DNA of 64,000 bases, taken from NCBI GenBank assembly GCA_002269645.1, contig NIVC01003713.1:1-64000 (forward strand). Direction: 5' to 3'. The notes below the pieces were generated by a model. The model searched no databases and was not told the DNA's origin. It saw only the letters and a list, made by a program, of their open reading frames with translations. Made by a program: the position numbers and the translations under genes. This DNA is from Macrostomum lignano (taxonomy: Eukaryota). Below, piece by piece: positions 16,501 to 19,500 of the stretch; the first letter of the stretch is position 1, and each line of letters begins with the position of its first letter.

Positions 16501-19500
16501 CCTACAGTCCAGACATTTTTCCCCTTGCAATTGTTGTCCATTTTTATCCCTAACCAAATTTTTGATCAACAAAAAGTCGTCCAAAGAGACTTCTTGCGTT
16601 TGAAGAAAGAAAGGATTCTCGTCCTGCTTCCTTGGATTCTCGTCCAAGAAAGGATTCTTGTCCGTATTAGTCATGCTTTCTTGCTATGACTAATACGCTC
16701 GTAATTATAAGTCGTAAGAAAGCGCAAAAACTTTCTGGCTGACCTGGTACCATTTCGCTGTCTGTCTGACTTGGTACCTTGTAGTATTATTGTTTGCTTC
16801 CATATTCCATTTCCATTGCGCTAATTCTACATCAAAAACGGCGATGATGCGCTTTGATTTACGTATCTTTGACGTACGTAGGCATATTGCATGTAATTAA
16901 GCCTAGTAAATCTACCGCAATCGCACTTCAATCTACAAGAAGTGTTAAGAAAAACCACTAATGTGATTAACAGTGGCGCAAATTTTGCCTCTGTCATAGG
17001 CGATAAAAATAGATTCATGTGTATATATACACTCGAGCTTTTGTGAAAGGCAAATCCAAAACCCATAACGTTTCTGTTTCCTAGCATACAGTTAGTAACG
17101 AATCGAGATGCAGGTCGCAAGTGAGGATGAGATCTGTAAGCCTTGCAGAATAGGCCAAGTAAAGACTTTCGCCGAATTGCCAGAAAGCGAGTTTACTGAG
17201 CTGATCAATCAAGGTACACCTGTGTTACTGCTTAGCACTCGAGACTCTGATCCCAAATGTACAAAGATTGGTGAGCAGCTAACTAACCAATTCAAATTTG
17301 ACCACCAGCATGCTGATTCGATGGACAGCTACGAACAAAAAGTCGCAAAATTCTTACTTGACGCGGAGACTCCGAACTCAAGCGAAGTGGCAATTGTCCA
17401 TGAGATCGAAACAACAGTCAACTGTCAACAGCCGGTACTCGGTGGTGAGATTGTGACCGAGTCCGACCTCTACAGACCGCTGTATCGCCGGAAGAACGCA
17501 AAATCAACTAAACTGTACGTGTTCCACTTGCAGTGCCCGACAGAGTGCGAAGACGAGGTCAGCTTCAACAAGACTGGTCTAAGCGATAAAAAGTCAACGT
17601 TGGAAAATAGCGAGTTTCACAGTTTTGTCGTCGGCAAGAGTGGCGCCAACTGGCAAGAAGTGCTGCGAGCATTTCACAGTCTGGACACTGTTGAAGATTT
17701 GGCTAACCAAATCTCTAAGCATTGTTGCAGTCTCCGGTCTCGGAAGATGACAGGATTGCCCAAAGCGGAATCACCGTCAACAGTCGCTTGTGAACTTGTT
17801 GATCAACCTCCATCAATTCCAACTGTGCCGGAGGCTGCGCAGCAAGACGCATTGAATCTGCTCCAGTCGCTGCACACCAAACCATCCAGCGAGTGCGCCG
17901 AACCGAACGTATTCGTTTCAATCGTTATTGGCAAATATGCCAATTCAAAAGCCAATCGAGTCGGCTTTGAAAAAGACAAGGAGTACTTTTTGGAAATTGC
18001 GCAACAACTCGGCTGCTCGACTGACAATGTGCACACTCTGTGCCCAGCTAATGACTACGCGACAGCGGATGAAATTAAAGATTTTCTAAGAAACATCGCC
18101 CAGGACTATAAGAGTAAGTCAGTATTGCCTCGCTGCGTATTCTTGGCCGTCTCAGCCCACGGCAACAGAGCTGGTATTCGCGACTCTGACGATAATGAAG
18201 TCTCGGTAGAAGAATTGATGAAGGATCTAGCAAGTCTTGGCGGCTTCGTCCTGCTGCTCTATCAAGCATGTCGTGGATCGCGCTTTCACCCGATTCATCG
18301 TCAATCTGACCAGTTCTATACATTGCCGTTGGTTTTCAGTCTGGGCTTTGAGAATCCGAAAACCCTCGGCTGCAGTTTGCCGGCGCTAATTCCCAGATCC
18401 GCCGCCATCTTTGCTAGCATGGCGAACTACGCAGCCTATAGGAATGAGGTCAAAGGCGGCTGGCTGCCCAGGGCTCTGCTGGACGTCAGCCGCCGCTCTG
18501 AATCTGTCAGTGTCAGACAGTTGGCCCAATTGGTGCAAGCAAGGATTTGTGAAATGTCCGACAATGGCGCAATAAGATGCAGACAAGGTGGCTCAGTGTA
18601 CGAGACCAGCATCCAGATTCAGTTTAGCGCTAACGAAGGCTGTGAGGACTTTGTCATCGAGACTGGCTTAGCAACAGGAGCTCAGCTATTTTAATTTCGG
18701 CTTTCTGCTGATGCTATAAACAAAACGACTTAATGGTGCTTAATCTGCCATTTTTGTACTGTACTAGCAATTCGCACGTGTTCTTGCGCAAAATCTCGTC
18801 ACTTTGTATTCTATATATTCTGAACAGCATCTTCGTACAATAAACGCAGAGAGCCTAACGTGTACATACACACTCAGTTCTACCCAGTTCTAAAATTAAA
18901 CCAGAGGGAAACCCGCCGGTTTTTTGGCTTTCGTCATGCTTTGTTTAATTAGACATAAATAGGTACGTAACTACGTAAACAGGCAAAATAATCTGTGCTA
19001 GTCACTCTCAGGATTAACCCTAATCTACTTTACGCCTTCAATAAACTACAACATACCTGCACTATGGATAAACTATCAATCTACCCTATTCCCAGGATAA
19101 ACTACCAATCTACCCTACCCAATGGATAAACTACCAATATATCCTACCCCAATGGATAAACTACCAATATATCCTACCCAATTGGATAAACTACAAATCT
19201 ATCCTATTGATAAACTACCAATGGATAAACTACCGATCTATCCTACCCCATGGATAAACTACCAATCTATCCCACCCCAATGGATAAACTACTAATCTAC
19301 CCCACCCCAATGGATAAACCACCAATCTATCCCACCCCAATGGATAAACTACCATTCTACCTTACCCAAATGGATAAACTACTAATCTATCCCACCCAAA
19401 TGGAAAACTACTAATCTACCCCACCCCAATGGAAAACTACTAATCTACCCCACCCCAATGGATGAACTACCAATTTATCCCACCCAAATGGATAAACTAC

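What the first reader, a model, noticed from the sequence alone, without database searches (positions are those of the whole stretch)
17108..18694. Intronless, divergent caspase nested antisense in an IP3 receptor intron
The His351/Cys388 dyad (SAHG, QACRG) is present, as are residues equivalent to the Asp-specificity pocket (Arg284, the Gln of QAC, Arg445), so it is predicted to be active and Asp-specific. It has no intron while every neighbour is intron-rich, is less GC-rich than the host exons, and has its own TATA-like palindrome and AATAAA. This points to a retrocopy, TE cargo or horizontally acquired (viral-like) gene. No CARD or DED prodomain is recognisable. Mammalian IP3R1 is a known caspase-3 substrate, so the nesting is intriguing, though it may be coincidental.
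Basis: partly seen in the sequence, partly recalled or inferred. Interest (0 to 1): 0.72.

Follow-up and report, generated by a model that had tools for sequence, protein, structure and literature searches.

The report
Divergent caspase gene inside IP3R intron
A flatworm (Macrostomum) gene for an unusual but apparently intact caspase protease lies backwards inside an intron of the IP3-receptor gene. It belongs to a small flatworm-specific caspase family and shows no sign of viral, transposon or retrocopy origin, so it is a modest curiosity.

Summary
Window 17108-18694 (+) is an uninterrupted 528-codon ORF with a significant caspase domain. It has the SAHG/QACRG dyad (His351, Cys388) and the Arg284/Gln386/Arg445 Asp pocket. 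It lies antisense in a canonical 5.4-kb GT-AG intron (16290-21680) of an IP3 receptor gene.

The origin story is not supported. There is no poly(A) tail, target-site duplication, TIR or LTR. The nearest outside relatives are animal caspases (caspase-3, CED-3), not viral or bacterial ones. Apart from three ordinary caspases, all relatives found are Macrostomum lignano paralogs. In the three mapped, the homologous coding region also sits in one large exon, so lack of CDS introns is a family trait.

A second copy of the locus in M. lignano (PAA74145.1, 95% aa identity) has the same nesting. Synonymous divergence matches the host (dS 0.05 vs 0.06), so nesting predates that duplication. dN/dS is 0.45 and CDS indels are in frame, which argues for a functional gene under relaxed constraint.

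One new, tentative point: the roughly 200-aa "prodomain" is predicted to be a second, degenerate caspase-like domain.

Verdict: a new member of a known kind, of modest interest.

The parts
17108..18694 (+). Single-exon CDS of the divergent caspase (528 aa plus stop)
   Evidence: ORF listing. Pfam Peptidase_C14, E=1.5e-13. 95% aa identical to M. lignano PAA74145.1.
17210..17722 (+). N-terminal domain (aa ~35-205), predicted degenerate caspase-like (pseudo-caspase) fold; tentative
   Evidence: AF2 model has mean pLDDT 53.6, with the core at 68-88. The top 50 Foldseek PDB hits are all caspases, best E=4.2e-5. hhalign against the family's own C14 domain gives P=0.005 and is in register. In the shuffle control 1 of 150 reached the real score, and there was no signal against canonical caspases.
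17723..17899 (+). Low-confidence, probably disordered inter-domain linker (aa 206-264); site of the 45-nt in-frame indel between the two copies
   Evidence: pLDDT below 50 over residues 174-264. Alignment of the two copies.
17924..18550 (+). Peptidase C14 (caspase) catalytic domain, Pfam match aa 273-481 (the structural domain runs about aa 265-520)
17957..17959 (+). Arg284 codon (S1 pocket)
   Evidence: Aligns with the R of the RxGxxxD motif in canonical caspases.
18158..18160 (+). His351 codon (SAHG), catalytic His
   Evidence: Invariant column in A1 and A3.
18263..18271 (+). Gln386-Ala-Cys388 codons (QACRG), catalytic Cys and S1 Gln
18440..18442 (+). Arg445 codon (S1 pocket)
   Evidence: Window motif [12 protein letters not shown] aligns with the xWRNxxxGSWF motif of canonical caspases.
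17020..17031 (+). TATA-like palindrome about 77-88 nt upstream of the ATG (putative core promoter; inferred)
   Evidence: Sequence read. Identical in the second copy.
18839..18844 (+). AATAAA about 145 nt after the stop (putative poly(A) signal; inferred); no genomic poly(A) tract follows
16290..21680 (-). Host IP3R intron (GT...AG, 5,391 bp) holding the caspase gene
   Evidence: Donor and acceptor read on the minus strand. tblastn exon map.
15972..16289 (-). IP3R exon immediately downstream (in host sense) of the intron
   Evidence: tblastn with IP3R fragments, 59-65% identity.
21681..22157 (-). IP3R exon immediately upstream (in host sense) of the intron
   Evidence: tblastn, 66-77% identity. 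Translation.
13538..44829 (-). Span of the host IP3 receptor coding region in the window
   Evidence: tblastn map. Pfam MIR and Ins145_P3_rec on ORF 42449-43642. IP3R homologs of the last exon. The L001 gene model of 2914 aa carries IP3R domains.
19041..21634 (.). 30-bp satellite array filling the rest of the same intron
   Evidence: TRF: 80.8 copies, 91% matches.

Best explanation
This is a vertically inherited, lineage-specific caspase paralog of Macrostomum, an animal-type peptidase C14A. It is one of at least four subgroups of a small divergent caspase family so far seen only in M. lignano.

The gene is a compact unit with one coding exon and its own putative TATA and AATAAA. It lies antisense in a 5.4-kb intron of the IP3 receptor gene. 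That arrangement already existed before the locus was duplicated or diverged (dS about 0.05).

The product most likely acts as an Asp-directed cysteine protease. Inference from conserved residues: Cys388 and His351 would form the catalytic dyad, and Arg284, Gln386 and Arg445 would bind the P1 aspartate.

The prodomain is not a CARD or DED. It carries an orphan N-terminal region of about 200 aa that is tentatively predicted to be a second, catalytically degenerate caspase-like domain. That domain could pair with, or regulate, the active domain in cis. This step is speculative.

The position inside IP3R is most simply a neutral positional accident, kept because nothing disrupts it.
For: Shown:
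- Caspase domain: Pfam E=1.5e-13. A Macrostomum-only C14 profile hits caspase-3, CED-3 and caspase-2/-7 at about E=1e-8. The AF2 model matches Sf-caspase-1, caspase-7 and CED-3 at about E=5e-9.
- All five catalytic and S1 residues align with canonical caspases.
- An exhaustive HMMER search of 1.84 billion representatives gave only 10 hits. Seven are M. lignano proteins. The other three are ordinary caspases, two of them with a CARD.
- Paralogs B (P0002, P0132) and D (P0136) have GT-AG introns in 5' exons and the homologous CDS in one exon. B-type paralogs lie next to a homeobox gene on two contigs.
- The second locus L001 (NIVC01000975.1) is collinear at 88-97% DNA identity. It carries the same single-exon caspase antisense in the IP3R gene model.
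- Caspase dS is 0.051 against IP3R exon dS of 0.058, so the two have the same age.
- Constraint: dN/dS 0.45, Fisher p=0.017. CDS indels are 3 and 45 nt. Flank indels are 1, 2, 4, 4, 9, 9 and 10 nt. Mismatch is 2.8% in the CDS against 3.8-4.8% in the flanks.
- No TE or retroposition hallmarks. No viral relatives.
Against: - No expression evidence could be obtained. The exact protein is not in any public gene set or transcript-derived assembly searched.
- Constraint is relaxed: omega is 0.45 against 0.04 for the host exon, and it rests on only 45 substitutions.
- GC3 (0.53) is lower than in the host exons (0.66-0.74) and in paralog B (0.60). This could mean low expression or a different history.
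- Conservation of the nesting is shown only across a shallow divergence (dS about 0.05). No other Macrostomum genome could be examined.
- The pseudo-caspase reading of the N-domain rests on a low-confidence model built from a 5-sequence alignment. Sequence signal is weak.
Confidence: 0.7

Rival explanations
1. Ancient retrogene. The founder of the whole Macrostomum family, or the nested copy itself, arose by retroposition of a spliced caspase mRNA. The hallmarks have since eroded, and some paralogs later gained short 5' exons.
For: In every mapped family member the C14 region lies in a single exon. The nested copy has its own putative promoter and poly(A) signal. Reverse-transcriptase sources exist in the genome, for example the RVT_1 ORF at 45424-46656.
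Against: There is no poly(A) tract and no target-site duplication. The nested ORF starts almost exactly where the large exon 3 of paralog B starts and lacks any trace of the exon 1-2 coding sequence. That fits a DNA-level copy of the big exon at least as well as retroposition. No intron-bearing parent for the homologous region was found.
Confidence: 0.15
2. Decaying or non-functional ORF. It is a duplicate drifting toward pseudogene status, still open by chance in both copies.
For: Omega is 0.45, far higher than the host's 0.04. GC3 is low. No transcript-derived record exists. Only two copies are known, so the test has little power.
Against: Both copies keep 528- and 542-codon ORFs with only in-frame indels, while flank indels are mostly out of frame. 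Omega is significantly below 1, p=0.017. All catalytic and S1 residues are retained across 44%-identical paralogs. The putative promoter and poly(A) motifs are conserved.
Confidence: 0.07
3. Horizontally acquired (viral-like or bacterial) caspase, or transposon cargo, inserted into the IP3R intron.
For: The sequence is very divergent, with only 10 hits in 1.84 billion representatives. Its composition differs from the host exons. One relative carries the UniRef name 'Triplex capsid protein 2'.
Against: The best external matches are animal caspases by sequence profile and by fold. Viral caspases score lower: ascovirus E=5.5e-7 with TMt 0.48, against cellular hits at E=4.6e-9 with TMt 0.55-0.67. 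IMG/VR holds no relative. No TIR, LTR or TSD is present and there are only two syntenic copies. Paralogs carry spliceosomal introns. The 'capsid' name belongs to an alternative gene model of caspase paralog P0134 that has no viral domain.
Confidence: 0.03
4. Functional coupling with the host gene. The antisense nesting links caspase and IP3R expression through transcriptional interference or co-regulation, or the caspase cleaves this IP3R. This reading is compatible with the best explanation.
For: The nesting is retained in both copies of the locus.
Against: Retention over dS of about 0.05 is what neutrality predicts. No DEVD is present in any IP3R exon of the window. Other family members are not in IP3R. 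The gene lies 818 nt and 2,986 nt from the nearest exons and does not overlap them.
Confidence: 0.08

Closest known systems
Animal caspases, peptidase family C14A (caspase-3/-7, CED-3, Sf-caspase-1)
   Same: Same fold. Same His/Cys dyad in SHG-like and QACRG motifs. Same Arg-Gln-Arg S1 pocket and the same p20-linker-p10 order.
   Different: Only about 15-25% identity, and 51 bits to Pfam against 166-222 bits for ordinary caspases. The p20-p10 linker is long and probably disordered (aa 390-430). There is no CARD or DED. The 270-aa N-terminal region is unrelated in sequence to known prodomains.
Macrostomum lignano paralogs: PAA74145.1 (P0001), PAA52298.1 (P0002), PAA74861.1 (P0132), PAA88902.1 (P0134), PAA52297.1 (P0136)
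   Same: P0001 is the same gene in a duplicated locus: 95% aa identity and the same IP3R-intron nesting. P0002 and P0132 share both the N-domain and the C14 domain at 44-46% identity, with one large coding exon.
   Different: P0002 and P0132 have two extra short 5' exons, lie next to a homeobox gene and are not nested. The C and D subgroups have shifted or lost S1 arginines.
Caspase-8 / FLIP(L) pseudo-caspase heterodimer (PMC7586951)
   Same: If the N-domain is a degenerate caspase-like domain, an inactive caspase-like unit sits beside an active one. That is analogous to FLIP(L) pairing with caspase-8.
   Different: Here the two units would lie on one polypeptide. No DEDs are present. Pairing is not shown, and fold confidence is low.
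Two-CASc-domain caspases of bivalves (Mytilus coruscus; PMC10967218)
   Same: A lophotrochozoan caspase expansion that includes proteins with duplicated caspase domains.
   Different: In the mussel proteins both domains are detected by sequence. Here the first domain is undetectable by Pfam and is seen only by structure prediction. No orthology is implied.
Viral caspases (Spodoptera frugiperda ascovirus 1a executioner caspase; giant-virus caspases)
   Same: Same fold.
   Different: The structural match is weaker than to cellular caspases. There is no sequence-level relative in IMG/VR and no viral genomic context.

Membership tests
Caspases (peptidase C14A) | Caspase/hemoglobinase fold with a p20-p10 arrangement, detected above the curated threshold | tested here: met
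   PF00656 at 51.5 bits against a cutoff of 21.4. Foldseek hits Sf-caspase-1, caspase-7 and CED-3 at about E=5e-9.
Caspases (peptidase C14A) | Catalytic His (SHG-type) and Cys (QACxG) dyad | tested here: met
   SAHG gives His351 and QACRG gives Cys388. Both are invariant in family and canonical alignments.
Caspases (peptidase C14A) | Arg-Gln-Arg S1 pocket for P1 aspartate | tested here: met
   Arg284, Gln386 and Arg445 align with the canonical positions.
Caspases (peptidase C14A) | Closer to animal caspases than to metacaspases, paracaspases or orthocaspases | tested here: met
   With the Macrostomum-only profile, all 60 PDB hits listed are caspases or CED-3.
Caspases (peptidase C14A) | Asp-directed endopeptidase activity | not testable with these tools
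   Inferred from residues only.
Initiator caspases | CARD or DED prodomain | tested here: not met
   No CARD or DED appears in Pfam even at E<=10. The N-domain fold hits are caspases, not death-fold proteins.
Processed retrocopy (retrogene) | Lacks introns that the parent gene has in the homologous region | tested here: inconclusive
   The paralogs mapped (P0002, P0132, P0136) also carry the homologous region in one exon. Their introns lie only in short 5' exons.
Processed retrocopy (retrogene) | Genomic poly(A) tract at the 3' end and flanking target-site duplications | tested here: not met
   No A-run follows AATAAA. Only chance-level short direct repeats are present.
Transposable-element cargo | Terminal inverted or long terminal repeats, adjacent TE genes, and multiple dispersed copies | tested here: not met
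   No TIR or LTR. Only two syntenic copies. The nearest RT ORF is about 27 kb away, outside the host gene.
Horizontally acquired or viral caspase | Nearest relatives in viruses or bacteria, or viral genomic context | tested here: not met
Tandem pseudo-caspase plus caspase architecture | A second caspase-like fold N-terminal to the active domain | tested here: inconclusive
   The top 50 Foldseek hits are all caspases, E down to 4.2e-5, but mean pLDDT is 53.6. hhalign gives P=0.005 and the empirical test 1 of 150. There is no signal against canonical caspases or Pfam.
Conserved nested gene | Same intronic position in independent genomes or loci | tested here: met
   It is met only at shallow depth: M. 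lignano contig NIVC01000975.1 has the same arrangement, with dS about 0.05. Deeper species were not available.

The most novel reading that the evidence does not exclude
The protein may be a fused pseudo-caspase plus caspase. An N-terminal, catalytically dead copy of the caspase fold would pack against the active C-terminal domain as an intramolecular pseudo-dimer. That domain has Thr at the His position, retains a Cys at the QAC-equivalent position, and has a degenerate S1 pocket. On this reading a flatworm-specific caspase would carry its own FLIP(L)-like partner and would not need CARD- or DED-driven dimerisation.
Probability: 0.3. Interest if true: 0.55.

Novelty: new member of a known kind. 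Interest (0 to 1): 0.3.

Why it matters
Flatworms are models for stem-cell turnover and regeneration, and cell death is central to both. According to a recent survey (PMC11463336), platyhelminths have lost the extrinsic-pathway adaptor FADD.

A Macrostomum-specific clade of catalytically intact caspases without CARD or DED adds to that repertoire. The clade has not been discussed in the literature searched. It should be included when apoptosis networks in this model are drawn.

If the N-terminal region really is a degenerate caspase domain, the family offers a natural example of a single-chain pseudo-enzyme/enzyme pair.

The nested position is a useful synteny marker for tracing the recent genome duplication. 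In itself it is not evidence of a functional link with calcium signalling.

Tried and rejected
- **Retrocopy hallmarks.** I looked for a poly(A) tract and TSDs and found none.
- **TE termini.** No TIR or LTR around the ORF; only 12-27-nt chance matches.
- **Viral origin.** IMG/VR scan was negative. BFVD fold hits are weaker than cellular caspases. The 'Triplex capsid protein 2' name on relative A0A1I8GWC2 proved to be an alternative gene model of caspase paralog P0134 with no viral domain.
- **Orthologs in other species or transcript assemblies.** Two word-indexed searches returned only P0001 and P0002. The exact-protein look-up was negative.
- **Remnants of paralog-B exons 1-2 upstream of the ATG.** None.
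- **DNA homology between A- and B-type loci outside the CDS.** None.
- **DEVD site in the host IP3R.** None.
- **Sequence-level assignment of the N-domain.** Pfam and NCBIfam gave nothing. hhalign against canonical caspases gave no signal.
- **Literature.** No paper mentions Mlig012038, PAA74145, A0A267FK42, PAA52298 or A0A267DSM2. Supplements of PMC11463336 are not held.
- **Second nested ORF, 32174-34216.** No family or structure match.
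Full report
**1. Observation**

Window 17108-18694 (+) is an uninterrupted ORF of 528 codons starting at an ATG. In-frame stops lie 10-15 nt upstream. An ORF of this length cannot arise by chance in sequence of 46-49% GC.

Pfam assigns residues 273-481 to Peptidase_C14 at E=1.5e-13, 51.5 bits against a curated cutoff of 21.4. In an alignment with three ordinary caspases recovered by the searches (P0129, P0130, P0131), all five residues fall in the canonical columns. 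The CED-3 and caspase-3 pairwise alignments agree.

The TATA-like palindrome is at 17020 and AATAAA at 18839. No A-run follows the AATAAA.

**2. Host gene and nesting**

The minus-strand ORF 13538-15349 is the channel domain of an IP3 receptor, with 270 IP3R homologs in the search.

tblastn with IP3R fragments places exons from 44817 (N-terminal ligand-binding region) down to 13595. Exons at 22157-~21705 and 16280-15972 flank the caspase. Pfam finds MIR and Ins145_P3_rec on the 42449-43642 ORF.

Reading the junctions on the minus strand gives ...CAAGAG|GTGAGT at 21681/21680. It gives a pyrimidine tract followed by CAG| at 16290/16289. The host intron is therefore 16290-21680, 5,391 bp.

The caspase ORF lies 818 nt and 2,986 nt from the two exon edges and overlaps neither. 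The rest of the intron is a 30-bp satellite of about 81 copies at 19041-21634.

**3. Relatives and source**

The best hit is Macrostomum lignano PAA74145.1 (BOX15_Mlig012038g1, 542 aa), which UniRef names 'Caspase family p20 domain-containing protein'. Identity is 95% over aligned residues. The differences are a 15-aa in-frame tandem duplication in the linker and a 1-aa indel.

An exhaustive HMMER scan of 1.84 billion cluster representatives gave only 10 hits at E<=1e-3. Seven are M. lignano proteins. The other three are ordinary caspases, two of them with a CARD (an Onchocerca CED-3-like protein and an ENA protein).

The M. lignano hits fall into four subgroups:
- **A:** the IP3R-nested gene.
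- **B:** P0002, P0132 and P0123, 609-615 aa, 44-46% identical over both the N-terminal region and the C14 domain.
- **C:** P0124, P0134 and P0125.
- **D:** P0136 and P0128. B lies on the same contigs as C or D members, and next to D on L002.

A profile made only from the Macrostomum C14 domains hits caspase-3, CED-3, caspase-2 and caspase-7 at about E=1e-8. All 60 PDB hits listed are caspases or CED-3. The AF2 model of the whole protein gives animal caspases as its best structural matches, at about E=5e-9 with TM 0.55-0.67 on the target. That model has mean pLDDT 57, with the catalytic domain at 70-90.

The protein is therefore a divergent but genuine member of the animal caspase family.

**4. 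The second locus**

PAA74145.1 lies on contig NIVC01000975.1 of GCA_002269645.1 as a 1,629-bp single-exon gene. It is antisense inside a 2,914-aa IP3R gene model, with a CPSF100-like gene beyond it.

That locus (L001) and the window are collinear at 88-97% DNA identity through exons, introns, satellites and the caspase. One block, L001 5916-12526 against window 12911-19630, is 92.3% identical over 6.8 kb. The exact window protein is not in the public gene collection. The window is therefore a homeologous or paralogous copy, or comes from a very close relative. I cannot tell which.

Synonymous divergence is the same for the nested and host genes: dS 0.051 for the caspase and 0.058 for the IP3R last exon. 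The caspase was already in the intron when the two loci separated.

It does so only at shallow depth.

**5. Is it under selection?**

| Region | dN/dS | Notes |
|---|---|---|
| Caspase, full length | 0.45 | 17.2 synonymous and 27.8 non-synonymous differences; Fisher p=0.017 |
| Caspase, C14 domain | 0.37 | |
| Caspase, N-terminal half | 0.50 | |
| IP3R last exon | 0.038 | |

The only CDS indels are 3 and 45 nt. The adjacent non-coding flanks carry indels of 1, 2, 4, 4, 9, 9 and 10 nt. Mismatch is 2.8% in the CDS against 3.8% and 4.8% in the flanks. The putative TATA and AATAAA are identical in both copies.

Catalytic and S1 residues are also kept across the 44%-identical B paralogs. Taken together, this indicates a functional gene under relaxed purifying selection. 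Expression could not be tested.

**6. Origin hypotheses**

*Retrocopy.* There is no poly(A) tract and no target-site duplication. The supposed contrast with intron-bearing relatives also disappears:
- P0002 has GT-AG introns only within its first 56 codons and carries residues 55-615 in one exon.
- P0132 is built the same way, and P0136 likewise has its C14 domain in one 3' exon.
- The nested ORF begins almost exactly where exon 3 of P0002 begins.

A single large coding exon is therefore a family trait. An ancient retroposition at the base of the family remains possible but is not demonstrable.

*TE cargo.* There are no terminal repeats and only two copies, both syntenic. The nearest reverse-transcriptase ORF (45424-46656) lies outside the host gene.

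*Viral or horizontal origin.* No relative exists in IMG/VR. Viral caspases match the model less well than cellular ones: ascovirus E=5.5e-7 with TM 0.48. Paralogs have spliceosomal introns. The UniRef label 'Triplex capsid protein 2' on A0A1I8GWC2 belongs to an alternative gene model of caspase paralog P0134 with no viral domain.

*Composition.* The lower GC is real: GC3 0.53 against 0.66-0.74 in IP3R exons. Paralog B is at 0.60 and the surrounding intron has GC 0.39-0.40. This is more simply explained by weak codon bias than by foreign origin.

**7. The N-terminal region**

No CARD, DED or any other Pfam or NCBIfam domain is detectable, even at permissive thresholds. The region is nonetheless conserved in subgroups A and B and in the long C form.

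Modelled alone, its best-predicted stretch is residues 63-144, at pLDDT 68-88. Mean pLDDT is 53.6 and the alignment has 5 sequences. All 50 top Foldseek hits in the PDB are caspases; the best is caspase-7 at E=4.2e-5 with TM about 0.5.

The predicted order of elements is β1-α1-β2-α2-β3-hairpin-α3-β4-[disordered]-β5-α4-α5. This mirrors the C-terminal catalytic domain element by element.

Profile-profile comparison of the N-domain with the family's own C14 domain is weak (probability 7%, P=0.005) but in register. VFHLQC(143) aligns on LLYQAC(388), and the catalytic-His column holds the family-invariant Thr103.

In a column-shuffle control, 1 of 150 shuffles reached the real score (25.7 against 13.5±2.8). 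Against canonical caspases there is no signal at all.

I therefore treat 'degenerate second caspase-like domain' as a tentative prediction, at roughly even odds. Duplicated caspase domains are reported in mussel caspases (PMC10967218). [quoted passage not shown] A cis pairing here is an attractive idea but entirely inferred.

**8. Link with IP3R**

Nothing found here supports a functional link. No DEVD occurs in any IP3R exon of the window. The other family members are not in IP3R genes. Retention of the nesting over dS of about 0.05 is what neutrality predicts.

**9. Mechanism: shown versus inferred**

- *Shown:* fold-family membership, presence and alignment of the dyad and S1 residues, gene anatomy, nesting, duplication history and moderate constraint.
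- *Inferred:* Asp-directed proteolysis through Cys388 and His351; activation by dimerisation and/or cleavage in the long linker at aa 390-430; transcription from the TATA-like element with polyadenylation after 18839.
- *Speculative:* a regulatory or pseudo-dimer role for the N-domain.

**10. Verdict**

The catalytic inference is reasonable. The exotic-origin interpretation is not supported.

This is a lineage-specific member of a known enzyme family. A near-identical copy is already in public annotation as a hypothetical, caspase-domain protein, though it is not discussed in the literature searched.

Interest is modest at 0.3. The one lead with some novelty is the possible fused pseudo-caspase domain.

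Noticed in passing
window 32174-34216 (+): A second long uninterrupted ORF (680 aa, Cys-rich N-terminus) also lies antisense inside the IP3R gene. It has no Pfam, NCBIfam or PDB sequence match and no exact public record, so its nature (gene or TE-derived) is unknown.
   Followed up: partly
window 19041-21634 and 23325-23729: The same 30-bp satellite unit occurs as an array of about 81 copies in the caspase-bearing intron. It occurs again, inverted, as about 14 copies in a nearby IP3R intron, so inverted arrays bracket IP3R exons 21681-23321. The arrays are also present in the second locus L001.
   Followed up: partly
window 45424-46656 (+): An ORF with a reverse-transcriptase domain (RVT_1, E=6e-24) lies just upstream of the IP3R start codon, probably a retroelement fragment. 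Its completeness was not analysed.
   Followed up: no
UniRef A0A1I8GWC2 (P0126), M. lignano: This protein is named 'Triplex capsid protein 2' in UniRef. It is an alternative gene model of caspase paralog P0134, with a partial C14 domain and no viral domain in Pfam, so the name looks like an annotation artefact.
   Followed up: yes
window 5455-6447 (-), 10201-11145 (-): The neighbours downstream of IP3R are a CPSF100/CPSF2-like metallo-beta-lactamase exon and an ORF with an RRM. The CPSF-like neighbour is shared with locus L001.
   Followed up: partly
window 57000-63000: An AT-rich block (GC 0.31-0.35) contrasts with 0.45-0.60 elsewhere in the window. It was not examined.
   Followed up: no
window 15543-15942: A 31-bp tandem repeat (12.8 copies) lies in the IP3R intron between the last two coding exons. 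It generates spurious ORFs on the plus strand.
   Followed up: no
L002 10001-17328; contigs NIVC01003266.1, NIVC01000920.1: On L002 a B-type and a D-type caspase paralog lie in tandem next to a homeobox gene. B-type next to a homeobox gene recurs on a second contig, which suggests the pair was copied by the same large-scale duplication as the IP3R locus.
   Followed up: partly
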